Notes: generated by a model from the sequence alone, not told the origin. Positions 2,014 through 30,503 are shown, counted from the first letter of the stretch. The stretch is 64,000 nt of DNA from Auanema rhodensis (GCA_964057225.1 OZ059894.1:17298001-17362000); one strand, 5' to 3'. Made by a program: numbers and translations.

Positions 2014-2085
2014 GGGCCGAGCCGGGGATCGATCCCGGGACCTCTCGCACCCTAAGCGAGAATCATACCACTAGACCACTCGGCC
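2014..2085 (-). tRNA. tRNA-Pro(AGG)
   Basis: Consensus copy. Confidence 0.96.
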
Positions 2086-4061: not shown

Positions 4062-4236
4062 TGAGATATCCATTCACTACAATGAAACTCCTACTATTCC
4101 ATATATATTTTTAACTGAATATTATTAATCTGATATCTATAGGTGAACCCTCAAGCTTAAAATTAATTGAATTTCAAGAGAACTTCAACTAAATACTAAG
4201 AAGAAGTACACTTCTCGAAAAAAAATGTTAAAACGT

Positions 4237-4279
4237 GGGCCGAGCCGGGGATTGATCCCGGGACCTCTCGCACCCTAAG
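4237..4279 (-). pseudogene. tRNA-Pro 3' half, interrupted in the anticodon stem by LTR A
   Basis: tRNA sequence stops at ...caccctaag and non-array sequence starts at 4280. Confidence 0.92.
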
Positions 4280-4707
4280 TATCGCGAATGCGATTATTCA
4301 TCATTCAATCGATGCAATCTCATCACGTTGGCAGATGAGATTCACGGGCACTCTGTTTTATACCACCGTCGCGGACGGTCGCTTTTCTCTCTTCTCGTTG
4401 CTGTCTTTATCTTATCACTCATCTAGTCTGAACCACCGTTCTATTCTTGTCCTTCCGTAAGACTATCTTTTGTCTCATTAGTGATGTATATCTAGTCTTA
4501 TTACATTTCACTCTAGTCTTCTATGTACTTTATCTAGTCTTAGTATATATCTTCTGGGCCTTATATTCTGTATTATGTATATCTGAATAGCATATGAATG
4601 AATCTTTCTTCCTCTAATAGTCTTTCATGTTAACAGGGCATAGAATAGAAAGTGTGAACCTGGGAGGCTATTTGAAGAGCTTTCTATCTTCAAAATGGTG
4701 CATCGGC
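4280..4707 (+). mobile_element. 5' LTR (~4280-4694) and tRNA-Gly primer-binding site (PBS) of BEL/Pao element A
   Basis: Begins tatcgcgaatgc (compare TGTCGGCGAATGC of element D and TGTCGCGA of element E), ends ...caaa, and is followed by TGGTGCATCGGC (4696-4707), complementary to a tRNA-Gly(GCC) 3' end. Confidence 0.75.
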
Positions 4708-5655
4708 ATCACTTTCTACTCTATGACCTTTCTATTGCGCTACTTTATCTTTTTTCTTTTTTTTCTTTAAGCCAGTCTGCTCGTTAATAGTGACTCGTTG
4801 GATGTCCTCTACAGTATAAGTTCAATGATCTAAATACTCTAAAGGAATCGTATGTCAGTACAACATAATTGGTTGTTAAATGTTGTCTAGATATCAGTGA
4901 TAATTAAACATTATTTAAAATTTTGGTTGATACCATATTTTTGTACCACATGATTACAGAAAATAACATAGTGGGTTATTCGCTATATAAACTCTATTGG
5001 ATTACCCAATGGCTACTTCCTTTAACTTGCCGGCAGTGACTCAGCTGGGATTGATCACCCCTTATTATGTTTCACAGAAGAATTTGCGAGAGTATGAGAA
5101 AAATGCAGACAAAGTACCAACAAACACATTTTATGGCAATCTTATTTCTACTGACTGAGGACAGTGAGAAACAATGATATGAATTACGCATTAGCAGAGC
5201 TACCGTCTAAAAAGGCTATTTATTAATTTATTATTTGATTTTGAGACCTTTTAATATCTTTCGTAACTTTCAATATTCATTGTAAACAATTTTGATTGAC
5301 TTCGAGTGTAAAAGTTATTTTAACAATTGTGAATCAATTGAATAGGTGACTAAAAGGCATCTTAGACCAATTTCTCCTTGCTATATGAGTAATGCTGTCT
5401 GTTTCCTCATCTGTAAAGGAGTCAGTATCTTAGAGATCAACGATTATTTGTGTGGAAGGAGCCTATCAACAAGTAACGTCTGTTGACCTACTTGTTGATG
5501 TTTCTTTGGTACCCTTGCACTCTCGGTAGGTGTTGTTTATATAAAAATGCGAAAGAGTTCCGAGTTTTTAATATTTACGGCTTGTTTTATAGTTTTTGAA
5601 TTTTTTTATTCATCCATTGTTTGTAAATCAATTGTTTCCAACCATATGAGTCATA

Positions 5656-6606
5656 TGTAACGACCAACGGGTCAATGAGAAAGGTCAGAGTCCAAATCAT
5701 GAAATTCATAAAATTTATATATTTTATCTTATATAAGATCATCACCCACGTCCTATAGGACAAAATACATTAACTATATTGTTAAAATCCTACGCAGTTG
5801 AAAATTTCTGTGAAAAATCACAAAACATCATAATATCCAATCCTACATAGATGAGATAATGATAAGACACGAAAGAGCTACGAATTATCATCCTACGCAT
5901 GTTAAAGCATAAAATATAAATATCAGCAAAGGTTAAATGAGATATTTCCAACATTTTGCACCAAAAAGTCGATTTTAGCAAATATGTTGAAAAGATACGC
6001 GAAAAAAGACAAAAGATGTTGCCATCTGTTCATTGACCTGGTGCGGCGCCATTAGCACCACGCAAACATCTCTCACACATTATCTAGGTCACCATCGAAT
6101 GACATGGAATATCAAAACATTTTAAAATGTTATGAGAAGTTAACCCACTGGTTTTGTTTCAAATCCATTAAATTATCTCATTTAATAATCTTACATATAC
6201 TTTTTGCAGATCAGCTCCTCCCTCTTAACATCCCACACGGCCTAGCTGTCAGACAGGTCATTCATTCCGCCGCTACAACCAGCCACAGCACCTGACGCCA
6301 TCTGCTAACCTATTCACCAGAGAAGGACAATCGACATCAAGGATCCTCAAGGAGAATCAAGTTAGTTTTCATTTGTTCGCATTAACACTTTAACCGCTTA
6401 TTGAATTTGAATTGATACTCTCTGGTATCCTTTATACATTTACATTAAGTTGGTAAGTTATTTTATAATTTCAATTTGTTTTATTTTAATTTCATTATTT
6501 CACATTTGACAGTTTATATTTCATTCACATATGTTATACAATATCCTTTGTTCATCTGTCCAGAAATAAATCTTTTGTCTCAAATTACTCATCCTTTTCA
6601 TACACA
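5656..6606 (+). mobile_element. Putative 5' LTR of BEL/Pao element B
   Basis: Starts TGTAACGACC, has splice-like signals and AATAAA (~6566), ends ...TACACA, and lies upstream of the element B gag. No partner LTR and no clean PBS, so the ends are uncertain. Confidence 0.4.
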
Positions 6607-8435
6607 TACTTTCTGATCAATCAAACTATAATATTTTGAATACTTTTTGGATATCCTTATTATATTTCAACCAATTAATATTAATATTGGTATTATATTT
6701 TTTGATAAAAAACAAGAGCATATTTAGTATCAAATTACTCAGAAAACTTTACTGAATTCATCAAAGCTAGTTTGCTCACATTTTTTGATCGATTTTGGGA
6801 AACTCAATTTTTTCTCTCTATTTCCTACAGTCATCTCTCAACTTGAATTGTTCTCTCATCTAGTGAATCATCCAATTTTTCTTTTTTTAACCAGAGAAAG
6901 ATACTTATTGAATTATCTTTGCCTGAACAATCTCAAATTTTAAAAATTTAAAAATATACTAATTTAACTAACAAAAAAAAAAAATTATATATATATTCAA
7001 AAGATAAAACATACATAATTAAACGTAATTAAACGAAACAGTAACAACTACACGAAAAAAATAACAGTATAACTCTCCAAAGAAAAAACTGTTAACAAAT
7101 ATTCAACTAAATATTCATTGTACCTTCTAATAGTGAACTATTTGCTTATCCATATTACTTGCACATCTTTTCTTATCTTCACTTTTTTTTTCTCCTATTT
7201 ATATTATACATATATTGTTAAATCAACTCATATTTATATTGTTATTCCTTCTATCGACAGCTATTATATTCGGACTTTAACTCAGTTGATTTTCAATAAT
7301 CAATAAACAAATTAGCTAGATTAAACACAAAATTAACTTGAACATTAATATTTCTCTTCAAACAAAATGATTATGAGTCGTTCTTCTCCATCGGAAAAAG
7401 AAACTCGTAACCTGACTGCCTTAGCAAGACAGTTAAGTTGTTTAAAAAGAAATATAACTCACGCGTTGAAGTTGTTCAACACGGTGAAGGAGGACATCCT
7501 CCCGCACCATCAAGCATTGATGCGTATATATTATAAAGCCATCCCGGTTGGGGACGTCTTCCGATCACTACGAGATCAGTTAGACGAACATCGAGTGATG
7601 CTTGAGGCACGCACCCATGTGGACTACCCAGCAACTTGGTTGGAATTATACCAAGGTAGCTATAAAAGGATGTTGGCCAAATACCCTCAGACCATGAAAG
7701 CTCATGAAATCGACCAACTTGTCACCAAAAACATTGGCGAAGAACATCCGCCCACAGTTGCAAAACTGATCAAGGGCATTTTGGACTATTGCGATGAGAG
7801 AGATCTCATGGTGAACACAGGCGAAGTTGAGGAATATACTCAACTTATCCAACTTCGCCGAGATGAACTCGATGACTATCAGAGTTCATTTGACTCTACA
7901 GTACATGACTCAACAACATTGCAAAATGACATGAACAGAATGAAATACTCCAGAAAAAACTTAGAGATGAGTTTCTTTTCTGGAATACAAAAACATTTGA
8001 ACATCACACCAGATAGAACACGACGACACAGAACACAAAGTACAAGTTCTGATGAAATCGGTTCCACACAAAGACAACCTACTCAAAAACGAGTGTACAC
8101 TACTCGAGCGAACAATAGTGACGTTATGATCGCATCTCCTCAGCACGATATTTCAATGCTTGAACCAAACAGTAACTCCACTCTTTTGAACGATGATCTA
8201 ATGCCGATATCAGAAAATGATCTTGTTCATTCTTTTAACAATCTGAGTACTGGTTCTAATAGCTTGGAAAGAGCTAGAGCGGATGCTGACAATGTTGGAA
8301 CCCCACTTGGAGCAGCTAATAAGCGGAAAGCTCTCTCACCATTGAGACACGCGCACTACGATTCTCGACCAATTACAGTCGAACAACATACAAACAATGC
8401 TCCCAATCATTGGTCAACTATGCAACAGAACATAG

Positions 8436-8816
8436 CGTTACATATCGTTTCTTCCCGTCTTTTCATGGTCGGAAGATATATGTACTTCTACCTTGTTCCT
8501 TAGGTAGGCAGACCCGAACGCCCCGATTTCCTTATTAAGACAAATACTTAAAGAGAAAAGGATTCATTATCAGATAACAAGAAAATACAATATAAGAATT
8601 ACATTAAGAAAGAATATAAAGAGATCTAATAAAGTATTAAATAGAGTATATATATAGATGATATAGAGATGAGACTCACATGACTATAAGACAACCTATC
8701 TGGGTTAGGCCAGAAGCAAGAGTGTCATGTGTGTCCCATGTTGTAGGCGGGGCTTGTTCAGGCTCCCGCTATTTGAATAGCGCGCACATGTTTACCATGT
8801 GCTTGCAGATGTGACA
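8436..8816 (-). repeat. 3' LTR of V1 (TGTCACAT...ATGTAACG)
   Basis: 381 bp, preceded by the purine tract AAGGTGGGGGGA; near-identical inverted copy at 17525-17905. Confidence 0.88.
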
Positions 8817-9839
8817 TCCCCCCACCTTAAAAAGTTGAACGTCCTCGTTCAAAAACAAAATAAATTAATTCACTTTTTAAGATAGTTGGAAAAAAAAATC
8901 ATGGTGTAGTGGATAAAAAAAAATGTATACAATACGATTTGAAAGTTTAGCTATTGTCTCTTCAAGTTTGTTGAATTCGAAATGTAGTCGAGTAGATTCT
9001 ATTCCATTCACTTGAGTAGTGAAATGCTTGCAAACGAGAGCTTTGCTTCTAAACCATTCGACTGTGATATAGTCGTTCATTTTCTTGAGTTGTACAGGTA
9101 CGGTGTTACCCTGAGAATAGGTCGAGCCCGTTCTGTACAAAAAAAATGAAAACTTGTTTAACCCGTATGACTAATGTCCATAAGGTGAATACAAGTAATG
9201 ATTAAGCATAAAAAATAGCAAGATTCACAAGAGAATGTTGAAAAAATCTACTCAATGAGAGTTGAAGTAATAAAACAAACCCTTGTAAAACAATAGCAGA
9301 CTTCTCAGAAAAAATCAATCAACAACAAAGAAGTGTTACAATCAGAAATGGCACAAAATAAAATAAAAAATTTCAACAATTTGATTTTGTTAAAAAAAAC
9401 TACCTTCAAGAAATTGTGATAACCGGAATAGATGTTGTCCGTTGGTAAGGTTTGACGAAGTCCTTGTGTACTCTTCTGCTTTTTCATTTATCTGTTTGAA
9501 CCACGACGAAAGATCTTTGAACTGCTGTAACTAAATAAGGCCCTTCGAATGAAGGTGTTAGTTTTTTTCGTGTAGAATTCACTTTTATCATAACTAAGTC
9601 ATTAACCTGAATTTCTTTATTTTGTGTTCTATTTCGTGTATTGTACCGTTGTTCATTCTTCTTTGTTGTTGTGTGACATACAAAAGGTATGGCTCTGGTG
9701 ATCCTTGTTCCTGATCTTTGTTGTCCTCGCTGATGTCCGAGTCCGACAGGGTGGCTGGTGAGTTAGATGAATATAAGAGCGTGGAAGCAACTAGACTCCA
9801 GTAAAAACGTTTGTGACAATGGCGTCTGATGAAGAAGGA

Positions 9840-11729
9840 TCGTTGATAATTGGTAGTAAATTTTAGTCCAGTGGAGGAGTCTGATACAAAAGACAAATTA
9901 TGCGAATAATACCATAAGTGGATGTACCGTTCCGGAACACCCAATCGGCCCATAAGACGTGTCTCATATTCCAGCGCGAGCGCACCTTGAGATTTATCAT
10001 ATTTCGATATGTCAATCTCTGTTGACTGTAAGGTTTGCACGATGTCCGGTGGCATGTCAGATGTTAGTTTATTCGCAAATTCATCCGGAGACAAGTCTGT
10101 GAGAATATTAATACCAGGGGTCAAGGATGATAATACCCGGTTCTTTATGGTATTCATAACCGCACAGAAAACTGCGTTAACGTCTTTTTCCGAGTAAACA
10201 ATGGTTTGGAGAGCCGGGTACAAGTTAGCAGCATCCCTTGTTAAATTCGGCTTAGGCTGTCGTTTGATCGAAAATTTAAAGTTGTCCAAAGGTATCTGTT
10301 CCAGACTTTCAGTTGCCTCAATTTTCTCATAAGTAGACGACGGTTGTCGTTGAAACCGCTCGTCGATGTCTTGAGAATTTATTTCAAACGGTGTGGTGTC
10401 GATCGAGGGAAAAAACGAGGCAATGACCGAGTCAACCATCTCTTCAGCCACGACGTCTATATTACACATTAGCGTGAGTTCCGGAACACAAAAATTTCTC
10501 TTATTCGCAGCTAGCAGAGCCTCTCGGAAAGTCACGGGCCTAATCAAGGGAGTCGGCAGTTGAAACAATGGTGTCATATGGTCATATTTCTGCTGTTGAA
10601 ATAGTCCTTTATCAGGTGTAAACTTCGCGTTAGACATAACAACTTCTAAATCTGAGTTATGCATGTCGTACGTGTCCATTATATTGTTGGTGAAACCGTC
10701 TCCCGGGAATAATTGATCTGCCAGTATTTGTATACCGATAAGATTCGCAGGTAATTTTATACAGGAAGACAACGGAATTGATGGTGATCCGATAGTGGAC
10801 ACTTCATTTTGCTCTAGACGGTCGACATTAGCAACACAATTGATGCTGAGAATATCCAAAGTCTTTGGTGACATAGTATTGAGATGCTCGGCACCTAGAT
10901 AAAACACCTTCTTTCCTAGTTGATGACATTTTTTATTCAAAAATCTTGCGACCACAAGTTTGTGCACTGGTAATGATGATGGTAGACAAACGGTTAGATT
11001 TCCTCTAGACTGGTGCGATAAGTCTGTGGCGTACTGACGTATGGATGGTGCATTAGTTATACGATCGCTGTCGACGTCTATGGCGGAGTGCTTAGACGTT
11101 GGTCGTTGTAAAGACACACATTCAGATAAATATGTACTCCCTCCCCTCATCGTCGATAGAGCCTTCGGGTACTTTGTAAGTATAAATCTGCTAAGTATAT
11201 CATCTGTGAAAGCAGTGAAGTACGTTAACGATGAAGTATGCCTAGAGATCGCCACAACAGCGTATGCCTGCCTCAAGTAAATCTCATCAGTCGGGATGGT
11301 AGACAGTCTAACTATCGCGATGAATCTAGATTGCATTCCTTGGTACTCATGCACCGTTTGTACCCCTGAGAAACCCTTTGATATTAATGTCTGCTTATCA
11401 CTCTGCGTAAAGGTAAGGTATTTTGTGGTCTTAACCTTAGGAATCGAGTCACTACTAAGGATCTTTGTGATGAATAGTGACCGTGTTGTTGTGTTCGTCG
11501 GTCCAGCACACATACCATCAGATGTGGTGATACCCATGTCCGAATTAGCGGTGATATATAATGGGTTAAGAATTTCACAAACGTCCCTTGGGCATCTGTA
11601 TGAGACGGATCTTGTTTCTCCGACCTTGAATACTCGAGATAGGTACCTATACTGCATAACAAATGTCGTGCCCAATGAATTTACAAATGGAATCTGGCAT
11701 AGGACGTGGCACCTGAGAAATGAATACAT
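9840..11729 (-). pseudogene. Endogenous viral element: helicase motifs III-VI and N-terminal part of an alphavirus-supergroup RdRp, truncated at motif B
   Basis: QIPF, SYRCPRDV, LTFTQSDK, TVHEYQG, VVAISRHT; RdRp PALQTIVY and EIDISKYDKSQ (motif A); ends at NYQR before the expected KSGD and GDD. Confidence 0.93.
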
Positions 11730-12824
11730 AAGATGAGTGCTCCAGGGTGGACCATAATCGCCTCGTCAATAAATAGCTCATCGCACGTGAAACGTCGTTC
11801 GGGATGCATTAGGTATGATGTGATTGTACGAACACGTTTCTCATTCGGGGTTATCTTCCACCCAAGTCTTTCAACATAATCGTCCTTTCCGGCTCTTGTG
11901 GCGACCAAGACACATGACTCATCACTCTCAGATAATCTCTTCGCAATCTCTGTAGTTTTTCCGCATCCGGGGGCAGCTTGCACAACAAATATATCAGTAG
12001 GCACCAATAAATCACGGAAATCTGACACTTTCTTACGAATTTCGTCATCCAGAGCGAAGAGACAATAGTCACTTACGACAGATACTCCCGCAACCTCAGT
12101 GTCAATACTAATAAACTCCCCGTCATAAAACTTCACCCGGTAGTCGCGAATAGAACACGAAGCCGACGTGAGTGCACGCCCCGTCGAGGAGATGACAACA
12201 TAGTTACCGGGTTCACGTGAAATCGTCTCACGAGCACGTTGATCTTCGTTATATATACGTAACACTCTGTTATGATTCGATACAGCGCTGGCATGGACAG
12301 CTGTGAGATAACGCATATATTCGTCGACGACTTCGGTCGGGGATGGGTAAGGTATTGATCCTCCGGTGGAGACTTCTTCTGCAGTCTTTTGTCGTTCTAA
12401 ATGTGGTTCCTGAGGACCTGTCTGTGATTTACTCCTATAAAATTTATTCAGATAGTATCTATAAATCGAGTCATTTTCCTCTGCAGGATGTGTATTACAT
12501 ACGGTCTTATAGACTGGACGAATCCTGTGAGTAGATGAATTCACGTACACTGAGCGACAAATAACGAAGACAGTTGAAGCCATCAAAACGCGAAGAGTTG
12601 TCCTATAGGCGCAGGTGATGGGTGCGACAAAAACTTCAACAGATATCGAATGTCGTAGAGGAACTACTGGGTGTCCGCCGGTGAATCTAAGGAGTAAGTA
12701 CGCAGGAAGTTGCGCTAAGGAATGTGCAAATGAGTACAAAGCGGCAGCAGCACCCGAGAAGACTCCAATAGTTCCGAAGGTATAAACCTGTCTCATAATG
12801 TAAAGAATGTTAATTCCGATGTTA
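11681..12824 (-). pseudogene. Endogenous viral element: replicase fragment with SF1 helicase motifs I-II (Martellivirales, nege/virga-like)
   Basis: Walker A VQAAPGCGKTT, Walker B LFIDEAIMVHPG; frameshift near 11697 into the next ORF. Confidence 0.9.
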
Positions 12825-20104: not shown

Positions 20105-20176
20105 GGCCGAGTGGTCTAGTGGTATGATTCTCGCTTAGGGTGCGAGAGGTCCCGGGATCGATCCCCGGCTCGGCCC
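20105..20176 (+). tRNA. tRNA-Pro(AGG)
   Basis: Consensus sequence in the opposite orientation to the 1-4279 array; native upstream flank replaced by element C. Confidence 0.92.
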
Positions 20177-20282
20177 ACGTTTTAACATTTTTTTTCGAGA
20201 AGTGTACTTCTTCTTAGTATTTAGTTGAAGTTCTCTTGAAATTCAATTAATTTTGAGCTTGAGTGTTCACCTATAGATATCA

Positions 20283-20620
20283 CGTTCCATATTGGCTCCT
20301 AGGGTTCCGGCTAGGTAACCATATGGACTTTAATAGTGTGAATGCCATTGTAAAAGTAACAGAGATTAGAGAAAAGAAGTTTATTCAGAATATGGAATAA
20401 CAATTATAAAAGCAAAATATAATAATAAGATAAATGAAACTACATGTTATGAGAAAGCCAACCTAGTTGCTTTCTCAGGGGTTTATATAGCAAAATATTA
20501 ATTACAAATATAATTGAATTTATACAAAAAGTAGTTCAGGTCTAGTTTCTTATTGAATTCTATTAACCAAAAGTCGGTTGACGTTGTCAACCGCCTTCTT
20601 TATAAGACACGTATGGAACA
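20283..20620 (-). mobile_element. Solo LTR (338 bp), TGTTCCATA...TATGGAACG, 4-bp TSD ATCA
   Basis: Interrupts the array spacer; ATCA at 20279-20282 and 20621-20624; minus-strand TATATAAA (20482-20489) and AATAAA (20380-20385). Confidence 0.85.
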
Positions 20621-20693
20621 ATCAGATTAATAATATTCAGTTAAAAATAATTATGGAAAAGTAGGAGGTTCATCGTAGTGAATGAACATTTTA

Positions 20694-20705
20694 GGCCGAG
20701 TGGTC
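20694..20705 (+). pseudogene. 5' 12 nt of a tRNA-Pro gene split by element D
   Basis: GGCCGAGTGGTC is followed by the LTR; the remainder lies at 28405-28469. Confidence 0.9.
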
Positions 20706-23700
20706 TGTCGGCGAATGCCTGACTAGAAATGAAATACAATAATTTAACCTAGAAAGATAACTCTTCTGAAACTCTAAACCATTGTCTAATAACCTTGTAA
20801 TTGTATCATTAACCTCTTGCGCAACATTCTTAAAGGATATTGAACTTTTATCACCTCTATAGTTTACATTGACCTGACCTTTGTATTCAAATATCAAATA
20901 TCACCTTCAAGCTAAATCATATATAAAGCCCAAGAAACCTTCACTCTCACTCTTAATTTAATTCTACCACTGAACTTATACCGATCTTATAATAAACCTT
21001 TCTCATTTAACCAACTGTTTGGATTCGCCACTAACTCATATTATCCCCATTAAACGGGGAACAACCGAGTATAGACGCTCGTCATTGGGAACATTAAAAA
21101 CCCAAATTGGTGCAACGACCAAACCAGGTATTAATTGTTAGAAACTTTCTTATCATATTTTTTTCTCTTTTTCATACTTTCCATCTCACTCTTCTTCACA
21201 TTTTCCTGACGATGAGACCGAACTAGCACTTACCGCACCGCATACAACCCTTTTTACATCACTGCGCATTTCGAAAACGAACATTAGCAAATTACTTTTG
21301 AAACCACCTCAACTTTCCATACCCACATTCAATGGAGATAACAAAACCTTTCCGACATTTTGGAGACAATTTAAAACGCTCATTCACCAAGACCCTGACC
21401 TCAATAATAGGCAAAAAAGCATTTATTTAGCTGAAGCTCTTAAAGGTTCAGCACGAGTTCATCTTGAAAATAAACCATTAGATGGCACTGCGTATGAACG
21501 TATTATATCTACTCTTAAAACCACTTACGCACCAAAACTAAAAGTTGACTACCGTATTCATGATGAACTGGTGAAATTACCTCCTGCAAAAAATGACCCC
21601 ATGTCAGTTAGATCTCGCGTGAATGAAATCAGAGCACTTCTTGATCAGCTTGAGACTGATACACTTTATAATTCTCAAGACCCCGCTTGGGTCAAACTTA
21701 TCACAACTAAATTTCCTATTGATATCATCAATATGCTCTGTTGGAGATCATCTAGGGCAACCTCTATAAAACAACTACTAAGAAACATTGAGGAAACGGC
21801 CGACTCAATGGAAAATTTTTCAATTTATTCTTCTAAATCTCCTTTTATCCCGCAATACCATGCTCAAACTAATTCAATTTCTCCCTTGAAACATAACTCA
21901 CATATTACTGCTGTTACGAAAACCGAACGCCCATGCGTATTTTGTGACCAAAACGGACATCGATCCGCAAAATGTTTAACCATACATAATCCTCAACAGA
22001 GGAGAGACATAATAAAACAAAAAAACAGGTGCTGGATTTGTTTCAGTCCTACACACACTAGCACTAAGTGTACCTTTGATAAATGTAAAATATGTAATAG
22101 AGATCATCACCCATCTCTTTGTCTCCCTCCTGCTTTATCAAAATCATCTAATAAAAAAGCAACAATGGGTATCAATTGCTCTATTTCGCAATCAACTCAC
22201 ACTCCACCTTCGCCCGCATATCTTATGACTTCTAAAGTATCAATTTTTAACCCCCATACAGGTAAGTTCCACACCAAATTATTGTTTTTCGACCCTGGAG
22301 CAACTCAAAGCTTCATTTACGAGCCGGCAGCCAAAGAATGCCAGCTCAAAACTTTAAATTCCCAATTAATCACAGCAACCGGTTTCTCCGGGAGCTGTGA
22401 GGCATTTAATTCTTTAACGGTCGAAGCAAGTTTAAGAACTCCATTTGGAAAAAATATCATACTTACGCTCCTCACCTCACCCAAACCTCTCACAGGAAAA
22501 CTAAAGAGCTGTCAACTTTCTCTAAAAGACAAAAAAGCTCTAGAACAATCTAATATAACCATTACTAACCAATTGGTGGATGGTGAATTATTCATTCCCG
22601 ATATTTTGCTAGGTATGGATTGGTGTGATACAATCATACATGATACCAAACCTACTATACTTCCATCGGGATTGAAAGTCAAACATACCCAGATTGGACC
22701 CTGTATTTACGGTAAGCAAATACCGAACGATAATATCGCAGCCATAAATACTCTTATTGTTAACCCTGTGATACCAGAAGACGTTATGATTAAACAACTT
22801 TTTGAAATAGATAACTCGGGAATTTCTCCACACGAAGGAGCCTTGAACCGATCGGAGCTATTCTTCAATGAATATACTTCGCTAATAAAATTCGACAAGG
22901 GTTTTGTTATGGCTCCATTACCTCTTAAATCAAACGCCACAAAAATTCAATCCAATCGAAGCATGGCATTAGCCACTCTAAACAGATTACAGAAATCTCT
23001 CAAAGAGGAACATAACCAGCTACAACACTATCATCAAACCATTATGCGATATATAGAGGAAGGTGTGGTGGAACAAGTTCCACTTACTTCAGAGAACTCT
23101 TTGCTCTACTACATGCCGCATAGAGGGGTATGGAAGCCCAACAAGAGCAAACCGCTGAGGGTTGTGTTTAACGCTTCAGCAAAGCAAAAAGGCCAACTCT
23201 CATTAAATGATGTTACGGAAACAGGTGAAAGTTTTAACAATAAAATCATAGATATTCTGATAGGGATACGGATCAAAAAGTACTTCCTCATGTGCGATAT
23301 TGAGGGTGCCTTCACCCAAATAAGGATAACTAATGATCATAAAGATCTCTGCCGCTTTCTCTGGTTACGCGATCCTCACAAAGGTACCACTCCAGATAAC
23401 ATTTTAGAATTAAGATTTAACCGACTGGCGTTTGGCATAACAGCCAGTCCGTCCATACTGAATATGTCACTCTACGCATTCTTGCAAAGCCTAGAGTCGC
23501 ACTTAGTTCCGGAAACCCTACGGTACCTATATGTGGACAATATCTTCTACACGACAAACAGCTCAGAAGATTTACATAGCATATATGAAGAATCTAAGCA
23601 GATTTTTTCTCGAATATCTATGAACATAAGAGAGTATTATAGCAACTACACCAACTTCAACTCAACCGTACCAGACAAGGATAAACATCCAGATCTGAAC

Positions 23701-26700
23701 CCAAAAATATTAGGCATTAAACATTATTCAGATAAAGACATTTTTTCGATAAACGGAGTAGCGGCTCCCCTTTTACTGCATTTCAAACTACTACTACGCC
23801 AAGTAATGAATGGGTCTATAGACTGGAAAGAACAAGTGCCAAGCGATGTGGTCAATAGCTGGAATACAGTCAGTAATAAAATAGGAACAGCTACGATTCA
23901 GATTCCACGAAAGCTGACAGATACATCAGAATGCCGAGAGATTTGGATATTTGTAGACGCTAGTGTACTAGCTATTGCTGCATGTGCCTTCTGCACATCA
24001 CCTACAACACGGAGTCCCCTGGTCATGGGTAAGATTAAATTAGCTCCAAAAAACAGAACATTGACAATTCCACGTTTGGAAATGTCTGCGATTCTCATAG
24101 GTATGAAAATGGCCGAAACCATACACAACAATTTACCAACACATGAGGTCTCCATCAACATCGCTTCCGACAGCCAGATAGCTTTATCTTGGCTGTTCAC
24201 TAAAAAGAATATACCTGTGTTCGTAAGCAATTTACGCCAGAATACTGACCAAATTGCAAGAAAATTAGAGCTAAAAGGAGCCAATATAACGTATCACTAC
24301 GTGGACACGGATCATAATCCGGCAGACATAGGCACTAGAGGCACCACTGATATTGCCCTTCTTAAGGACAAATGGCTTTTTTCTCCTGGTTGGCTATTAA
24401 ATAAGAACGATAGACCAGCAAAGGAATTCAGAGCACCCTTAGAAGAAGAAGAACCTTCAATGCTTATACTACCAGTCACCACAAACAATCCTGTATTAGA
24501 CAATCTTTTAGGCAAACGCAACAAAACGCCAACATCATATTTATTAAAAGCAGCAACAACAGAATGGCAAGTATCCCAGTTTATTAACACAACCGCTGAG
24601 ATACTGCTTATAAAAGAAGCTCAGACTCATCTTTCAAATTCATATAAAAAACAATTTCGATTAAAACAGGATGGGAATGGACTAATCTGCATACAGACTC
24701 GGTTCACCAATTCATCACTTCCAACAAAAACTAAGTTTCCATATCTTCTTCCCAAAAAATCTACTTTAGGTAAACTCATTCTTATGTTCCTACACAGGAC
24801 GAATGGTCATGCCGGAGTTAGCCAATTACTGTACCTCTTTATGACAAGGTTCTTCATGACAGCGGCTAGACAAGTATGCAAATCAATAATAAAAAGATGT
24901 GTGCCATGTCAAAAGACTCTAAGTAACCCATTTTCAATAGAATACTTTGCCCCGTTACCGGAGGACAGAGTGACAACAGCCATGCCATTTAGACATACGG
25001 GCCTTGATTGCATAGGTCCCATAAAATTCAGAAAAAATCAGCATATATACGTTGTGATATTCACCTGCCTTACTATTAGAGCCGTCCATTTAGAACCAAT
25101 TAATGACATGAGTTCGAACTCTTTTATCAATGCCTTCATTCGATTTGTAGCGCGGAGAGGTTTACCGCATGTTCTACGATCAGACAACGGGGCCAATTTC
25201 ACTCATGCGGCCAAAATAATTCACACATTAGAGGAACATAGTAGGGAACACCAGACTAATTTTATCAACTATATACAAAATCACAATATCACATGGATAT
25301 TAAACACTCCCAGCGCTCCCTGGACTGGTGGGGTTTGGGAGAGATTAGTTGCTATTACAAAGAATGCACTTGTGAAAACACTATCACTTAAGTTAATAGA
25401 AAAAGACCAACTAGTTACAGCAATAATTAAAATAGAAGGAATCATGAACTCACGGCCCATCACGTATACAGATTCCGAGAATTTTCACGAGAATCCACTA
25501 ACGCCAGCAGATTTTTTAACTCATGGCTCCCCCATACTCATACCAGTTGATAATGTAGACAGTTTAGGTAACAGACTCGACCTACCCAACACGATCGCAA
25601 GCAACAAACAAGCGTTTGAAAATTTACAGAAAATCAAAATAATAGCCGAAGCATTCTGGAACACATGGTCACACGAATATCTTCTTACTTTAAGGCATGC
25701 ACATGCATCAAGGAAAATGGGGCGCCATAACTTGCGACACCCATATCACAACGAAATAGTACTTGTAGAAGAGGACCATACAAATAGGAACAATTGGAAT
25801 ATGGCTAGGGTAATCGAACTAATTCATTCTTCAGACAAAGTAGTTCGGACCGCCAAGATAAAAACAGGTAGCGGTAAGATATTGACAAAACCAGTAGAGC
25901 GATTATACCCTTTAGAACTTTTTGATGAATTCACAGAAACTCAGCGAAAAACCGCACATATTAACCATGCCACCTATTCAACACACCCAAACACAAGGCA
26001 TACAAATACGAATTTCTTGACTAATATCATGAAATTCTTATTATTAATACAACTATTTCTTGTCGCCACAGCTGAGCCATTATTCACCTGCTCATACTCT
26101 CATATACTATTTCCCGCACAAACAAAACCATCGACATTTTGTATTAATGGGGACTGTCATGATTTACCAGCCAACCAATCAAAAGATATTCAACTTCAAG
26201 TGTCTGTAATTCCAAAAACTACAGCAGTTACTCGCTACGACAAAGATAGGCGGCAATCTCAGATTTGTCATCTCCCCCACCCCTGCGATTTTCCTCCACC
26301 TGCGTTATTGCATATAATAGGCAACCCACATTGTAACCCTTTCTTAGCTATTTTGATAGCTCTTACTCCAATAATAGGCTGCGCTCTTTTTTGCATTATC
26401 GGGGGCCTAATCTATAAAAAATTAAAAACACACCGCCAACAGCACACAATTTCGTACATCCCTTCTCTCTTATTCGCAATCTTTTATCTCACATGCCAAG
26501 CGCAAGCTTGTGGATCCCCCAACGCGCACAAAAACATAGAATTCTTTTGCGACGATTTACACAATTGCACAAAAATAACCAACGAAGAAATTTCATTCAA
26601 TCCCCTACAAAACTCTCTTTGCTCCTACATAAAATATCAAAACTCCACTATAGGCAAACTAGAAATTCAAATAATTCAGCAAAAATTTTTATGTCAAAAA

Positions 26701-28404
26701 GTTTCCCAAGGATTTACTCGCATTACTAACCTAACTATCCACTCCTCTCATAGATGCGCCGGTACAACTCACTGCCCATGGGGCACCGGATGCAATGATA
26801 TCGGACAGGATACTTTCGTAGCCGAACTACATTCAGCTTACGAAAATCCTGGAAGAACCTTCTGCACCAGAGCCGGAGGAGGCCTATTCAACAGCTGTGG
26901 ACTTCCTATAGAAGGATGCATTTTATTTAGGCCAACTTATCAGCCCGAAAACGAAGAAGTATACGAAGAAATTAAATGCATACAATGGAAACAGGAAGTG
27001 CAAGCAAAATTATTAATCACATACCTCAATAACACTCACCAATACGATATTTTCCTACAACCCTACCGAAAATATGAGTTTCACGGAATTTCATTACAGA
27101 TTTCGTCGGTTACAACAAAAGCAACGACGGAACTATACAACAAAATTTTTCTCACATCTGAGACTAAAAGCTACATGATACCGGAACAAATAAAACCAGC
27201 GGTAATATGCAGCAATGCACGAATCGCAGCAGATAAGTTTAATGCATGCCACATACGAAAGCCTTGCCCATGTTTGGGGGCCGCAGCGCAGCTCTCTTGC
27301 AATTGCGATTCAGCAACACAAAGAGAACTGAAAAAATATAAACTTCCACAAATTAATACAAATTATAGAATCACAAAAGAAGCAGGAACAATAACTGTTT
27401 TATCACAAATGGAAGAATCAACGCTCACAATGGAAAACCCGCAATTTAGCATCGAAAGCTTATATACTAATAGACATCCTTGTTCTTCAGATTTTCAAAT
27501 GTTAACAGGATGCTACAAATGCAGAGAAGGAACAACGCTGAATATTACATGTGAAACAAAGGACGAACTGAATGCCATTCTGAACTGCGACTCCTTTTCT
27601 ACTACAATACGATGCTCTGACCAAAATCCCGCCACAACGGTCAAACTATATTTCAATGAACCCAAAGTACAAGAAAACTGTACTCTGACTTGCGGACGAG
27701 CAACAAAACAAATTATACAGCTAAGTACCAGACTACACTACATAAGCGACACTACCATTTTTTCAGAAGAATCGATCAAACTACATAATGGAACATCCGG
27801 ACTATCATGGAATCTCCCGAATTTGGAACCGCTTTTCGACGTCATCCATGATAATTGGAAATGGATAGTACCTGCCGTAGCTGCAATCACTGCAGGTTCA
27901 TACTTATTATACATAGCAGCCCCATTCCTTACATCATTACTTCTTCCTGCTATACTCTCTTATTGCTGTGTGAGAAACTCAAACCGCAACCCTCGCCCGG
28001 CAATGTCGGCGAATGCCTGACTAGAAATGAAATACAATAATTTAACCTAGAAACATAACTCTTCTGAAACTCTAAACCATTGTCTAATAACCTTGTAATT
28101 GTATCATTAACCTCTTGCGCAACATTCTTAAAGGATATTGAACTTTTATCACCTCTATAGTTTACATTGACCTGACCTTTGTATTCAAATATCAAATATC
28201 ACCTTCAAGCTGAATCATATATAAAGCCCAAGAAACCTTCACTCTCACTCTTAATTTAATTCTACCACTGAACTTATACCGATCTTATAATAAACCTTTC
28301 TCATTTAACCAACTGTTCGGATTCGCCACTAACTCATATTATCCCCATTAAACGGGGAACAACCGAGTATAGACGCTCGTCATTGCGAACATTAAAAACC
28401 CAAA
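20706..28404 (+). mobile_element. Structurally complete BEL/Pao (belpaovirus) element D with envelope, inserted in the tRNA A-box; TSD TGGTC
   Basis: 401-bp LTRs 20706-21106 and 28004-28404 (4 mismatches counted by eye); PBS TGGTGCAACGACC at 21108-21120; TSD at 20701-20705 and 28405-28409. Confidence 0.96.
21298..28020 (+). CDS. Single-ORF Gag-protease-RT-RNase H-integrase-envelope polyprotein (phlebovirus Gn/Gc-like env)
   Basis: PTFNGD (DUF1759), three Cys-His knuckles, FDPGA, CDIEGAF, YVDN, FVDAS, HxxxxH...CxxC, DCIGP/SDNGANF/GGVWE; signal-like MKFLLL at 26029; Cys-rich Gc-like HRCAG...PGRTFCT...GC; C-terminal TM; stop lies inside the 3' LTR. No ATG at the 5' end. Confidence 0.93.
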   Translation: MKPPQLSIPTFNGDNKTFPTFWRQFKTLIHQDPDLNNRQKSIYLAEALKGSARVHLENKPLDGTAYERIISTLKTTYAPKLKVDYRIHDELVKLPPAKNDPMSVRSRVNEIRALLDQLETDTLYNSQDPAWVKLITTKFPIDIINMLCWRSSRATSIKQLLRNIEETADSMENFSIYSSKSPFIPQYHAQTNSISPLKHNSHITAVTKTERPCVFCDQNGHRSAKCLTIHNPQQRRDIIKQKNRCWICFSPTHTSTKCTFDKCKICNRDHHPSLCLPPALSKSSNKKATMGINCSISQSTHTPPSPAYLMTSKVSIFNPHTGKFHTKLLFFDPGATQSFIYEPAAKECQLKTLNSQLITATGFSGSCEAFNSLTVEASLRTPFGKNIILTLLTSPKPLTGKLKSCQLSLKDKKALEQSNITITNQLVDGELFIPDILLGMDWCDTIIHDTKPTILPSGLKVKHTQIGPCIYGKQIPNDNIAAINTLIVNPVIPEDVMIKQLFEIDNSGISPHEGALNRSELFFNEYTSLIKFDKGFVMAPLPLKSNATKIQSNRSMALATLNRLQKSLKEEHNQLQHYHQTIMRYIEEGVVEQVPLTSENSLLYYMPHRGVWKPNKSKPLRVVFNASAKQKGQLSLNDVTETGESFNNKIIDILIGIRIKKYFLMCDIEGAFTQIRITNDHKDLCRFLWLRDPHKGTTPDNILELRFNRLAFGITASPSILNMSLYAFLQSLESHLVPETLRYLYVDNIFYTTNSSEDLHSIYEESKQIFSRISMNIREYYSNYTNFNSTVPDKDKHPDLNPKILGIKHYSDKDIFSINGVAAPLLLHFKLLLRQVMNGSIDWKEQVPSDVVNSWNTVSNKIGTATIQIPRKLTDTSECREIWIFVDASVLAIAACAFCTSPTTRSPLVMGKIKLAPKNRTLTIPRLEMSAILIGMKMAETIHNNLPTHEVSINIASDSQIALSWLFTKKNIPVFVSNLRQNTDQIARKLELKGANITYHYVDTDHNPADIGTRGTTDIALLKDKWLFSPGWLLNKNDRPAKEFRAPLEEEEPSMLILPVTTNNPVLDNLLGKRNKTPTSYLLKAATTEWQVSQFINTTAEILLIKEAQTHLSNSYKKQFRLKQDGNGLICIQTRFTNSSLPTKTKFPYLLPKKSTLGKLILMFLHRTNGHAGVSQLLYLFMTRFFMTAARQVCKSIIKRCVPCQKTLSNPFSIEYFAPLPEDRVTTAMPFRHTGLDCIGPIKFRKNQHIYVVIFTCLTIRAVHLEPINDMSSNSFINAFIRFVARRGLPHVLRSDNGANFTHAAKIIHTLEEHSREHQTNFINYIQNHNITWILNTPSAPWTGGVWERLVAITKNALVKTLSLKLIEKDQLVTAIIKIEGIMNSRPITYTDSENFHENPLTPADFLTHGSPILIPVDNVDSLGNRLDLPNTIASNKQAFENLQKIKIIAEAFWNTWSHEYLLTLRHAHASRKMGRHNLRHPYHNEIVLVEEDHTNRNNWNMARVIELIHSSDKVVRTAKIKTGSGKILTKPVERLYPLELFDEFTETQRKTAHINHATYSTHPNTRHTNTNFLTNIMKFLLLIQLFLVATAEPLFTCSYSHILFPAQTKPSTFCINGDCHDLPANQSKDIQLQVSVIPKTTAVTRYDKDRRQSQICHLPHPCDFPPPALLHIIGNPHCNPFLAILIALTPIIGCALFCIIGGLIYKKLKTHRQQHTISYIPSLLFAIFYLTCQAQACGSPNAHKNIEFFCDDLHNCTKITNEEISFNPLQNSLCSYIKYQNSTIGKLEIQIIQQKFLCQKVSQGFTRITNLTIHSSHRCAGTTHCPWGTGCNDIGQDTFVAELHSAYENPGRTFCTRAGGGLFNSCGLPIEGCILFRPTYQPENEEVYEEIKCIQWKQEVQAKLLITYLNNTHQYDIFLQPYRKYEFHGISLQISSVTTKATTELYNKIFLTSETKSYMIPEQIKPAVICSNARIAADKFNACHIRKPCPCLGAAAQLSCNCDSATQRELKKYKLPQINTNYRITKEAGTITVLSQMEESTLTMENPQFSIESLYTNRHPCSSDFQMLTGCYKCREGTTLNITCETKDELNAILNCDSFSTTIRCSDQNPATTVKLYFNEPKVQENCTLTCGRATKQIIQLSTRLHYISDTTIFSEESIKLHNGTSGLSWNLPNLEPLFDVIHDNWKWIVPAVAAITAGSYLLYIAAPFLTSLLLPAILSYCCVRNSNRNPRPAMSANA

Positions 28405-28469
28405 TGGTCTAGTGGTATGATTATCGCTTAGGGTGCGAGAGGTCCCGGGATCGATCCCCGGCTCGGCCC
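28405..28469 (+). pseudogene. 3' part (nt 8-72) of the tRNA-Pro gene split by element D
   Basis: Resumes with the duplicated TGGTC. Confidence 0.9.
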
Positions 28470-28644
28470 ATGTTTTAACATTTTTTTTCGAGAAGTGTAC
28501 TTCTTCTTAGTATTTAGTTGAAGTTCTCTTGAAATTCAATTAATTTTGAGCTTGAGTGTTCACCTATAGATATCAGATTAATAATATTCAGTTGAAAATA
28601 ACTATGTAAAAGTAGGAGGTTCATCGTAGTGAATAGATATTTTA

Positions 28645-28716
28645 GACTGAGTGGTCTAGTGGTATGATTCTCGCTTAGGGTGCGAGAGGTCCCGGGATCG
28701 ATCCCCGGCTCGGCCC
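28645..28716 (+). tRNA. tRNA-Pro(AGG) with altered acceptor stem (possible pseudogene)
   Basis: 5' end is GACTGAG instead of GGCCGAG; the rest is consensus. Confidence 0.7.
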
Positions 28717-28779
28717 ACGTTTTAACATTTTTTTTCGAGAAGTGTACTTCTTCTTATTATTTAGTTGAAGTTCTCTTGA

Positions 28780-29997
28780 TTAGAATAAAGGAATAGATTT
28801 TGTGGTCTACAGCTGTGAGCATTTCTTTAGTGGAGTGATAATTGTTCGGATGAATGAGAACATCTTCAACGATGTGGTAAGGGAATTTGTTAAAGATCAT
28901 AGCGGCACACATTTCGCGGGATACCGTAGCTCCGGCTGCTTCAATCTGATAAGTGCCTTGGTTTCCCCGAAGGTTTCCTTACATGATTTTGCATTATTGC
29001 TTGCAAATCTTAAATTGCGTAGTTGTGCTAAGAGAGAGTTTATATCGGAGAAATAATCTCCAAATTCACAAACTAATTCTTCTCGCATGAGCTCATAGTT
29101 TTGGGTAGAGGGTTCAATTCCTCTTATTGCTATTTGTGAATTGCCTTTAATGCTCTCGCAGAGCAGATTGACCTTTTCTAAGATCGTAAATTGTTCATTA
29201 TCATGAACTAATCTATTGAAACGGCCCCAGAACGATTTGAAGTTCTTTGGTTTGCCATCAAATGTCGGTAGCGACATTGTTGGTTTTTGAATGTTAGTTT
29301 GTTGGGTGTGTAGGAAAGTTTTGATAAGTTCCAGAAAATGATCATTTGCTTTGCTCTCTGTTTCATTGTTTTCCGCTGAGCAATTGCTGTTGCTCTCAGA
29401 TTCATTCTTATGCAGGGTTTTTCTCAGCTTTCTAAGTATGCGTTTGTTCGTTTAATGCTTATATTCCTTTTTCTTTCTTTTTGGTGTGACTTGACGTGGT
29501 CTAATGATTGCCACGATTTTTATCAAGTATGTTTTTTGCTCAAACACGCTTGGTTTGAGTTGTATCTTACCTGCCACGCGGGACTTAAAGCGGCTAAGAT
29601 CTAAACTAGCCGATGCACCAATTTGTGGCGTTATACCGCAAGGGTAGAGAATGGTTTATGAGTAGAACACAAACGAATAAGTAGAAGAAGGTTTATTGAT
29701 AAACTTAACAAGACAAGCACGGAATAAAATCACTGGCTGCGATCGTTGAAGATGTAAGAGTGCTTGTAATTTTTGGGCGGTTCTTGGCCTGAATTAAAGT
29801 GTTACTTACGCCACATGTGAACACATATGGTGTGCAAAATGTTTTAATGCAGATTCAAAGGAAGAAGATGAAGAAAGAAAAACAGAGAGAGAAAAAGAGA
29901 GAGAGATAGATAGATAGAGAGAAAAAGGGAGAGAGAGAGAAAAAGAAAGAAACAAAAAAGAAACAAACAAACGAAAACTTACTCGCTTATCGCGACA
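28780..29997 (-). mobile_element. 5' fragment of BEL/Pao element E: LTR (29622-29997), tRNA-Gly PBS, truncated gag
   Basis: Minus strand begins TGTCGCGATAAG; pyrimidine-rich microsatellite in the LTR; ...CAAA-T-TGGTGCATCGGC; DUF1759-like LPTFDGKPKNFKSFWGRF at 28897-29277. Confidence 0.88.
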
Positions 29998-30104
29998 CTG
30001 ATATCCATAGGTGAATACTCAAGCTCAAAATTAATTGAATTTCGAGAGAACTTCAACTAAATAATAAGAAGAAGTACACTTCTCGAAAAAAAATGTTAAA
30101 ACAT

Positions 30105-30176
30105 GGGCCGAGCCGGGGATCGATCCCGGGACCTCTCGCACCCTAAGCGAGAATCATACCACTAGACCACTCGGCC
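30105..30176 (-). tRNA. tRNA-Pro(AGG)
   Basis: Consensus copy in a 247-bp unit. Confidence 0.95.
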
Positions 30177-30351
30177 TGAAATATCCATTCACTACGATGA
30201 AACTCCTACTTTTCCATATATATTTTTAACTGAATATTATTAATCTGATATCTATAGGTGAATACTAAAGCTCAACATTAATTGAATTTCAAGAGAACTT
30301 CCACTAGATACTAAGAAGAAGTACACTTCTCGAAACAAAATGTTAAAACGT

Positions 30352-30423
30352 GGGCCGAGCCGGGGATCGATCCCGGGACCTCTCGCACCCTAAGCGAGAA
30401 TCATACCACTAGACCACTCGGCC
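30352..30423 (-). tRNA. tRNA-Pro(AGG)
   Basis: Consensus copy; last unit of the array. Confidence 0.95.
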
Positions 30424-30503
30424 TGAAATATCCATTCACTACGATGAACCTCCTACTTTTACATAATTATTTTCAACTGAATATTATTAATCTTAATCTA
30501 ATC

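What the first reader, a model, noticed from the sequence alone, without database searches (positions are those of the whole stretch)
4237..30493. tRNA-Pro array as a landing pad for LTR retrotransposons
Seen: four different LTRs adjoin array sequence directly: A in the anticodon stem (4279/4280), D in the A-box with TSD TGGTC, a solo LTR in the spacer (20283), and E in the spacer (29997). B, V1 and V2 are nested inside these elements. The gene-rich 30 kb to the right has only faint relics. A, D and E share T(G/A)TCG starts, CAAA ends and Gly PBSs. Known: Pol III-gene targeting occurs in yeast Ty1/Ty3 and Dictyostelium elements; I do not know it as established for BEL/Pao. Inference: either active targeting of Pol III genes or tolerance in a redundant array.
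Basis: partly seen in the sequence, partly recalled or inferred. Interest (0 to 1): 0.78.

Follow-up and report, generated by a model that had tools for sequence, protein, structure and literature searches.

The report
Retroelement nest at tRNA-array edge
The last few units of a nematode tandem tRNA-Pro gene array hold a rearranged pile of at least six unrelated LTR retroelements. It includes an intact Atlas-like belpaovirus and a captured RNA-virus fragment. It looks like ordinary build-up in a tolerant array edge, and true tRNA-gene targeting is not shown.

Summary
The four LTRs share no sequence beyond their tips.

- The array pieces between 20104 and 28779 are inverted, and two TE/array junctions (20103/20104, 28779/28780) are not LTR ends, so the locus is rearranged.
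- "B" is two different BEL/Pao fragments.
- "V1" is a chimeric LTR element (8437-12882, TSD ATAGC) carrying about 3 kb of a nege-like virus helicase-RdRp, nested in a BEL/Pao gag.

D is an intact Atlas-like belpaovirus with a 2240-aa gag-pol-env ORF. The host is a clade V nematode.

All insertions sit in the last 5-6 diverged units of the array, and the 17 core units are clean. Two insertions destroy tRNA genes; two unrelated LTRs share one spacer site (p about 0.07).

Best reading: tolerance and retention at a decaying array edge. Active Pol III targeting is neither shown nor excluded.

The parts
1..4279 (-). Core of the tandem tRNA-Pro(AGG) array. It holds 17 complete genes, a 247-bp unit and a 7-unit (1729 bp) higher-order repeat. 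The last, partial gene (4237-4279) is cut at tRNA nt 29/30.
4280..4707 (+). LTR A (4280 to about 4695; starts TATCGCGAAT, ends CAAA) plus PBS TGGTGCATCGGC (4696-4707). Only a 5' LTR is present; there is no second copy in the window.
4708..7366 (.). Unassigned 2.66 kb between the PBS of A and the gag ATG. It has no ORF of 70 aa or more, no repeats and no BEL/Pao similarity. Whether A and B-left are one element is unresolved.
7367..16777 (+). B-left, a degenerate BEL/Pao element. The gag N-terminus is 7367-8436. It resumes at 12888 with DUF1759 gag, RT, Peptidase_A17 and the integrase HHCC motif, and ends at 16777. The coding sequence is split over several reading frames and is interrupted by the V::EVE insertion.
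8437..12882 (-). V::EVE, a chimeric LTR element nested in the B-left gag with TSD ATAGC (8432-8436 and 12883-12887; a 4-bp ATAG reading is also possible). In its own 5'-to-3' order it consists of: the first 63 bp of its LTR (12882->12820); the nege-like virus helicase-RdRp fragment; an integrase C-terminal remnant (9762->9487); the 3' UTR and PPT; and a complete 3' LTR (8816->8437).
9711..12604 (-). Endogenous fragment of a nege-like (+)ssRNA virus: helicase plus RdRp up to about motif B, frameshifted. It is 35-41% identical to nege-like and Negev virus replicases.
16778..17905 (+). V2, a second, 5'-truncated copy of the 3' end of V (end of integrase, 3' UTR, LTR). It is 97.8% identical to V1 in inverted orientation and sits between B-left and B-right.
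17906..20103 (+). B-right, a different BEL/Pao fragment. It starts again at the integrase HHCC motif, then has DUF5641 and a further 360 aa. It is 36% identical to D, against about 25% for B-left. It has no LTR and is joined to inverted array 1 nt upstream of a tRNA 5' end.
20104..20282 (+). Inverted array piece (unit positions 73->1, then 247->142) with an intact tRNA-Pro at 20105-20176.
20283..20620 (.). Solo LTR of 338 bp with ends CGTTCCATA...TATGGAACA and 4-bp TSD ATCA, in the spacer about 70 nt upstream of a tRNA gene. It is unrelated to the other LTRs.
20621..20705 (+). Inverted array piece (unit positions 145->61), ending in the 5' part of a tRNA gene split by D.
20706..28404 (+). D, an apparently intact Atlas-like belpaovirus. 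It has 401-bp LTRs with 4 differences, TSD TGGTC, and one 2240-aa ORF (21298-28020). The ORF carries gag DUF1759, RT with YVDN, Peptidase_A17, integrase, DUF5641 and a phlebovirus G2 env.
28405..28779 (+). Inverted array piece (unit positions 65->1, 247->1, 247->185) with a degenerate tRNA at 28645-28716.
28780..29997 (-). E: a 5' LTR (29997->29622), PBS TGGTGCATCGGC (29620->29609) and the N-terminal part of a DUF1759 gag (ORF 29277->28897). It is truncated at 28780 against inverted array.
29998..30500 (-). Terminal two units of the array in forward orientation. Unique sequence follows.

Best explanation
This is a transposon nest at the decaying distal edge of a tandem tRNA-Pro gene array in a clade V nematode.

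The array core is kept uniform by unequal exchange or gene conversion, seen as a 7-unit higher-order repeat. That process removes any unit carrying an insertion. The last five or six units escape it, drift in sequence, and are individually dispensable. LTR-element insertions that land there are therefore retained, while insertions in the neighbouring genes are lost to selection.

Retained elements then become targets for further insertions. One example is the chimeric V element carrying a nege-like virus fragment, which landed in a BEL/Pao gag. Retained elements also become substrates for rearrangement: at least one inversion, which flipped 630 bp of array, and two or more deletions.

Shown: the junctions, the TSDs, the element identities, the inversion and the core/edge difference. 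Inferred: the order of events, and that retention rather than integrase targeting causes the enrichment.
For: - Positions. All four array insertions lie in the last 5-6 units. The 17 core units are clean. Under equal targeting of units this has p about 0.005.
- Divergence. Edge and interspersed units differ from the core consensus at 4.5% of sites, against 2.1% for core units (p = 5e-6). The tRNA copies next to the nest carry 2-4 substitutions, while 12 of 21 copies are identical.
- Higher-order repeat. Units 7 apart are 99.6-100% identical.
- Site spread. Insertion sites are at tRNA nt 29/30, at nt 8-12, and twice at about -70. Two insertions destroy their tRNA gene.
- Family diversity. At least six unrelated LTR families are present, including a probably non-BEL one, V.
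- Nesting. V::EVE sits in a gag with its own TSD, and the gag reading frame is in phase on both sides.
- Rearrangement. The array is inverted between 20104 and 28779, and two junctions are not LTR ends.
- Literature. Reviews of Pol III targeting list only yeast and Dictyostelium elements, all inserting outside the gene.
Against: - Two unrelated LTRs, the solo LTR and E, occupy the same spacer position within 1 bp in different units (p about 0.07).
- All three elements with the T(G/A)TCG...CAAA termini (A, D, E) are in array sequence. The young element D chose 1.4 kb of edge array over about 17 kb of adjacent dead TE sequence.
- Clearing of the core by homogenisation would hide targeted insertions as well, so the edge pattern does not exclude targeting.
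- This is a single locus. No genome-wide data were available.
Confidence: 0.55

Rival explanations
1. Active targeting. The integrases of these nematode belpaoviruses, and possibly of the solo-LTR family, are tethered to Pol III transcription complexes or to the tRNA-Pro unit itself. The array would then be a preferred integration site, with a hot spot about 70 nt upstream of the gene and others inside it.
For: - Four of four array-adjacent LTR ends are true integration junctions, and two have both TSD copies.
- There are none in the 33.5 kb of flanking genes (p = 4e-4).
- The solo LTR and E share a site within 1 bp (p about 0.07).
- A, D and E have similar LTR tips, suggesting related integrases.
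- Counting all six datable insertions, 4 of 6 are in array, against an 18% share of sequence (p = 0.011). This count includes the founder insertions.
Against: - The sites are not stereotyped, and two lie inside the gene, unlike every known Pol III-targeting element.
- The core of the array, with 17 intact and presumably active genes, has no insertion.
- V inserted into TE sequence.
- Excluding the founder insertions, the preference for array over TE sequence is not significant (p = 0.15).
- No paper found reports tRNA association for BEL/Pao or Atlas viruses.
Confidence: 0.25
2. General chromatin effect. The array edge is open chromatin, or alternatively heterochromatic and small-RNA-producing like a piRNA-type cluster. 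It attracts or traps many kinds of insertion, including RNA-virus cDNA, with no specific recognition of Pol III factors.
For: - Unrelated families are mixed together.
- A non-retroviral EVE lies inside the nest, as in insect piRNA clusters (from memory: Whitfield 2017, Palatini 2017).
- Elements lie in both orientations.
Against: No small-RNA or chromatin data are available. The EVE reached the locus as cargo of an LTR element that hit a gag gene, which needs no special locus property.
Confidence: 0.15
3. Assembly artefact. The inverted block and abrupt junctions would come from mis-joined long reads in a repetitive region.
For: A 3990-bp inverted duplication with a single mismatch starts 3 bp after the array end. 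This could point to fold-back or haplotype mis-assembly nearby.
Against: The inverted array units are 3-6% diverged from the others and carry their own insertions with intact TSDs. The V1 and V2 copies differ by 2.2%. These are the signatures of real, aged sequence.
Confidence: 0.05

Closest known systems
Pol III-gene-targeting LTR retrotransposons (Ty1, Ty3, S. japonicus Tj1, Dictyostelium DGLT-A and Skipper-2)
   Same: LTR elements found next to tRNA genes. The tRNA genes may act as safe havens in a gene-dense neighbourhood.
   Different: The known elements insert at fixed windows outside the gene: Ty3 at the transcription start, DGLT-A 13-33 bp upstream, Ty1 within about 750 bp upstream. 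They are Ty1/copia or Ty3/gypsy elements of yeasts and amoebae (PMC5911963, PMC5006619). Here two insertions are inside the gene, the others are about 70 nt upstream, the elements are BEL/Pao in an animal, and there is only one locus.
Atlas virus and other nematode belpaoviruses with a phlebovirus-like Env (Ancylostoma ceylanicum; Cer13 of C. elegans)
   Same: D has a single gag-pol-env ORF, a phlebovirus G2 (Gc) domain, the YVDN RT motif, near-identical LTRs and a strongylid-related host (PMC9094657).
   Different: D is shorter: 2240 aa and a 7.7-kb element, against 2828 aa and 9.2 kb. Its best database relatives are only 25-30% identical. It sits inside a tRNA gene. Integration sites of Atlas viruses are not discussed in the papers read.
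Non-retroviral EVEs captured by LTR retrotransposons (nodavirus-like EVE in Bursaphelenchus xylophilus, PMC5177903; mosquito EVEs beside BEL/Pao and gypsy elements)
   Same: An RNA-virus replicase fragment lies collinear with retrotransposon sequence, bounded by LTR sequence. It was integrated with a TSD.
   Different: The donor virus is nege-like. The chimera keeps only the first 63 bp of its 5' LTR plus a full 3' LTR, which suggests an aberrant strand transfer in a single reverse-transcription event. It is nested in another element inside a tRNA array.
TE accumulation at edges of concertedly evolving tandem arrays (rDNA and satellite array borders)
   Same: Clean, homogenised core. Diverged, insertion-rich terminal units.
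   Different: The array here is of tRNA genes with a 7-unit higher-order repeat.

Membership tests
Pol III-gene-targeting LTR retrotransposons | Insertions at a stereotyped distance outside the Pol III gene, leaving the gene intact | tested here: not met
   The sites are tRNA nt 29/30 (A), nt 8-12 (D), and about -70 (solo LTR, E). Two of the four disrupt the gene.
Pol III-gene-targeting LTR retrotransposons | Most genomic copies associated with dispersed Pol III genes | not testable with these tools
Pol III-gene-targeting LTR retrotransposons | Integrase interaction with TFIIIB, TFIIIC or Pol III subunits | not testable with these tools
   This needs biochemistry or genetics.
BEL/Pao (Belpaoviridae), Atlas-like nematode clade (element D) | Domain order gag (DUF1759), RT, Peptidase_A17, integrase, DUF5641 | tested here: met
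   Pfam hits lie in that order along the 2240-aa ORF. The best homologues are all BEL/Pao polyproteins.
BEL/Pao (Belpaoviridae), Atlas-like nematode clade (element D) | Phlebovirus Gc-like env fused in the same ORF, and YVDN in place of YxDD | tested here: met
   Phlebovirus_G2 scores E = 2.8e-46 at aa 1755-2040, and Phlebo_G2_C also hits. YVDN is at aa 745. The criteria come from PMC9094657.
BEL/Pao (Belpaoviridae), Atlas-like nematode clade (element D) | Paired LTRs, a PBS after the 5' LTR, and a target-site duplication | tested here: met
   The 401-bp LTRs have 4 differences. The PBS starts TGGTGCA one base after the LTR. The TSD is TGGTC.
Non-retroviral EVE carried by an LTR element (V::EVE) | Significant homology to an RNA-virus replicase, with disrupted reading frames | tested here: met
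   RdRP_2 scores 1.2e-50 and Viral_helicase1 also hits. Nege-like replicases score down to E = 5.5e-96. There are frameshifts between the helicase and RdRp ORFs and after motif B.
Non-retroviral EVE carried by an LTR element (V::EVE) | Bounded by LTR-element termini and a TSD | tested here: met
   The 63-bp LTR start at 12882 is 98% identical to the start of the 3' LTR at 8816. ATAGC lies on both sides.
Solo LTR (20283-20620) | Short terminal inverted repeats with TG..CA-type ends, flanked by a TSD | tested here: met
   The ends are CGTTCCATA...TATGGAACA, and ATCA is duplicated.
Solo LTR (20283-20620) | Homology to the LTR of a full-length element | tested here: inconclusive
   There is no related sequence in the window. 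The rest of the genome is unavailable.
Functional Pol III tRNA gene array | Cloverleaf, A and B boxes, oligo-T terminator | tested here: met
   ARAGORN and Rfam (52 bits) call the genes. A T8 run lies 14 nt downstream. The T-loop has A at position 54, which is unusual. Expression was not tested.

The most novel reading that the evidence does not exclude
Nematode Atlas-like belpaoviruses with T(G/A)TCG...CAAA LTR tips and a TGGTGCA PBS actively direct integration to Pol III-transcribed tRNA genes or arrays. Integration would occur at a recurrent spacer site about 70 nt upstream and even inside the gene body. This would be the first Pol III-gene targeting known for BEL/Pao, and for any animal LTR retroelement.
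Probability: 0.18. Interest if true: 0.8.

Novelty: new member of a known kind. Interest (0 to 1): 0.45.

Why it matters
If the enrichment is only retention, the locus is a clear textbook case of how the edge of a concertedly evolving gene array turns into a transposon graveyard.

It also preserves two useful specimens. One is an apparently intact Atlas-like belpaovirus from a low-GC clade V nematode. The other is a snapshot of how an RNA virus became endogenous: a nege-like replicase fragment inside a chimeric LTR cDNA that kept both integrase-recognised ends and made a target-site duplication.

If real targeting lies behind it, that would extend Pol III-directed integration, so far known only in yeasts and social amoebae, to animals and to a third LTR superfamily.

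Tried and rejected
- Finding other copies of D. A whole-length protein search gave at best 30% identity. The env-only search gave one relative, from Oesophagostomum dentatum. The source genome is therefore not in the collection.
- Collection scans. Metagenome scans with the D polyprotein and with the tRNA 3' half found nothing. The viral-contig scan found nothing.
- A simple two-break inversion restoring a collinear array. No single pair of the observed junctions does so. At least one inversion plus two deletions are needed.
- The solo LTR as the missing 3' LTR of E. Its right flank fits that idea, but the idea is rejected because the solo LTR has array and a TSD on both sides and shares no similarity with E's LTR.
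- A-LTR...B-left...V2-LTR as one chimeric insertion. Rejected because its outer flanks, a tRNA and an integrase gene, are not contiguous.
- V as a BEL/Pao element. Its integrase tail has no BEL/Pao similarity. It has only a sub-threshold Tf2-type SH3 hit (E = 0.057), so its class is left open.
- A second LTR or repeat in 4708-7366. None found.
- Literature searches for BEL/Pao or nematode LTR elements near tRNA genes. Nothing relevant.
Full report
**What the window is**

ARAGORN finds 21 tRNA genes of 72 nt spaced 247 bp apart. Twenty are tRNA-Pro(AGG). One is the same gene with a point change in the anticodon, read as Leu-AAG. Rfam recovers 18 of them at or above threshold, most at 52 bits. 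An exon of a short-chain dehydrogenase at 42175-42750 is 61-69% identical to its closest strongylid homologues: Ancylostoma ceylanicum, Angiostrongylus, Haemonchus, Dictyocaulus and Trichostrongylus. The host is therefore a clade V nematode near Strongylida. With about 33% GC, Heterorhabditis is a guess only. The sequence is not human.

**The array**

A unit-against-window blastn places forward array (tRNAs on the minus strand) at 1-4279 and 29998-30500. Inverted array lies at 20104-20282, 20621-20705 and 28405-28779.

The core has a 7-unit higher-order repeat: units 1729 bp apart are 99.6-100% identical. Core units differ from their consensus at 2.1% of positions. The unit next to the nest, the inverted pieces and the two terminal units differ at 4.5% (Fisher p = 5e-6). 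Twelve of the 21 tRNA copies are identical. The copies bordering the nest carry more changes: four at 3990 and two at 28645.

- **A** begins at 4280 (TATCGCGAATGCG) after tRNA nt 72..30, so the break is in the anticodon stem. Its LTR ends CAAA at about 4694 and is followed by TGGTGCATCGGC.
- **The solo LTR** is 20283-20620 (CGTTCCATA...TATGGAACA) with ATCA duplicated on both sides.
- **D** is 20706-28404. Its 401-bp LTRs differ at 4 positions, and TGGTC is duplicated. That is tRNA nt 8-12, inside the A box.
- **E** lies on the minus strand. Its 5' LTR runs 29997->29622 (TGTCGCGATAAG...CAAA), followed by PBS TGGTGCATCGGC and an N-terminal DUF1759 gag fragment. It stops abruptly at 28780.

The four LTRs share no similarity beyond their tips in a word-7 blastn. 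The motif A/T-TGGTGCA occurs only at these three PBS sites in the window. A and E share 12 nt of PBS. From memory, these match the 3' end of insect and nematode tRNA-Gly(GCC). D shares only TGGTGCA, so its primer tRNA is not established.

**What the elements are**

*Element D.* D carries one 2240-aa ORF. Along it lie DUF1759 gag, RT, Peptidase_A17, integrase, DUF5641 and a Phlebovirus_G2 domain (E = 2.8e-46) plus Phlebo_G2_C. The RT motif is YVDN. These are the hallmarks given for Atlas virus and its kin in hookworms (PMC9094657). The closest database proteins are only 25-30% identical.

*Element "B" is two elements.* B-left covers 7367-8436 and 12888-16777. It runs from gag to the integrase HHCC motif and is split over several frames. 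B-right covers 17906-20103. It starts again at the HHCC motif with a different sequence, about 6 of 18 aligned residues identical by eye. It is 36% identical to D, against about 25% for B-left. B-right has no LTR and is joined to inverted array 1 nt upstream of a tRNA 5' end.

*"V1" is the most informative piece.* The 1.1-kb inverted repeat (8436-9555 and 16778-17905, 97.8%) is the 3' end of an LTR element. It comprises the end of an integrase (..KLTPSFEGPYLVTAVQ..), a 3' UTR, a purine tract and an LTR of about 380 bp starting TGTCACATCTGC.

Upstream of the V1 copy, on the same minus strand, lie about 3 kb of helicase and RdRp (Pfam RdRP_2 1.2e-50). Their best relatives are replicases of nege-like and Negev viruses at 35-41% identity. 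The match stops at about RdRp motif B, where the integrase remnant begins.

At the far end, 12882->12820 repeats the first 63 bp of the same LTR at 98%. The whole 4.4-kb unit is flanked by ATAGC on both sides. The BEL/Pao gag reading frame is in phase across the site.

So a chimeric cDNA with both integrase-recognised ends was integrated into a gag gene. Its structure is an LTR stub, the virus fragment, and the element's 3' end. An aberrant second strand transfer during one reverse-transcription event would give exactly this structure, but that is inference.

V2 is a 5'-truncated second copy at the B-left/B-right boundary. The class of V is open: there is only a sub-threshold Tf2-type SH3 hit.

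**Rearrangement**

With the solo LTR, D and one copy of each TSD removed, the inverted pieces form 630 bp of contiguous array. Its ends (unit positions 73 and 185) are joined to the interiors of B-right and E. No single inversion restores a collinear array.

A workable history is as follows, but the order is inference:
1. Insertions of A/B-left and of E's element.
2. V insertions.
3. An inversion with one break in E's gag and one in the array.
4. Two deletions.
5. Insertion of the solo-LTR element, followed by LTR-LTR recombination.
6. Last, insertion of D.

**Targeting or tolerance?**

*For enrichment.* Four of four array-adjacent LTR ends are real integration junctions. No BEL/Pao relic exists in the 33.5 kb to the right. 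Under uniform insertion this has p = 4e-4. That contrast is what selection against insertions in genes would also produce.

*For a hot spot.* The solo LTR (TSD at unit positions 142-145) and E (flank starting at 141) are unrelated yet share one site, GATATCA/G. The chance of such a coincidence among four sites is 0.07.

*Against Pol III-type targeting.*
- The sites are not stereotyped.
- Two insertions destroy the gene, whereas all described Pol III-targeting elements insert outside it. Those elements are yeast or Dictyostelium copia/gypsy elements (PMC5911963, PMC5006619).
- The 17 intact core genes have no insertion, and all events are in the terminal 5-6 units (p about 0.005).
- V went into TE sequence.
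- Once elements were present, the choice of array over TE sequence is not significant (p = 0.15).

Homogenisation of the core would erase targeted insertions too, so the edge pattern cannot exclude targeting.

**Verdict**

My best estimate is retention at a tolerant, decaying array edge (0.55). Active targeting gets 0.25, a general chromatin effect 0.15 and an assembly artefact 0.05.

**Limits**

The source genome is absent from the protein collection.

Broken elements are described only by where they are interrupted.

Noticed in passing
window 8437-12882 (EVE core 9711-12604), minus strand: A nege-like virus helicase-RdRp fragment carried by a chimeric LTR element. The element keeps only the first 63 bp of its 5' LTR plus a full 3' LTR, and is integrated with TSD ATAGC into a BEL/Pao gag. 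It looks like a single-event record of how an RNA virus became endogenous in a nematode.
   Followed up: yes
window 30504-34493 and 45510-49499: A 3990-bp inverted duplication with one mismatch (at 34038). The left copy starts 3 bp after the last array base. The right copy has unrelated sequence at the corresponding end. It carries two ORFs (166 and 117 aa) with no Pfam hit. It is either a very recent segmental duplication or an assembly fold-back.
   Followed up: partly
window 1-4279: The tRNA array has a 7-unit (1729 bp) higher-order repeat. One copy (3496-3567) is tRNA-Pro with a G-to-A change in the anticodon, read as Leu-AAG. All copies have A instead of T at T-loop position 54.
   Followed up: partly
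window 20706-28404: D appears to be an intact, young Atlas-like belpaovirus. It has an uninterrupted 2240-aa gag-pol-env ORF and LTRs with 4 differences in 401 bp. It is only 25-30% identical to anything in the protein collections.
   Followed up: partly
Both carry the integrase HHCC motif and are separated by the truncated V2 copy. How the B-left/V2 joint arose (deletion or template switch) is unexplained.
   Followed up: partly
window 4708-7366: 2.66 kb between the PBS of A and the gag ATG at 7367, with no ORF, repeat or protein similarity. A segment around 6211-6345 is bounded by nematode-like splice signals (ttttgcag / gttagt). Its origin is unknown.
   Followed up: no
window 20279-20282 / 20621-20624 and 29998-30002: Two unrelated LTRs (the solo LTR and E) inserted within 1 bp of the same spacer sequence, GATATCA/G, about 70 nt upstream of the tRNA gene, in different units.
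   Followed up: partly
window 42175-42753 and 63074-63370: Host gene fragments. One is a short-chain dehydrogenase exon whose closest strongylid homologues are 61-69% identical. The other is an ORF with a weak TIL-domain hit.
   Followed up: partly
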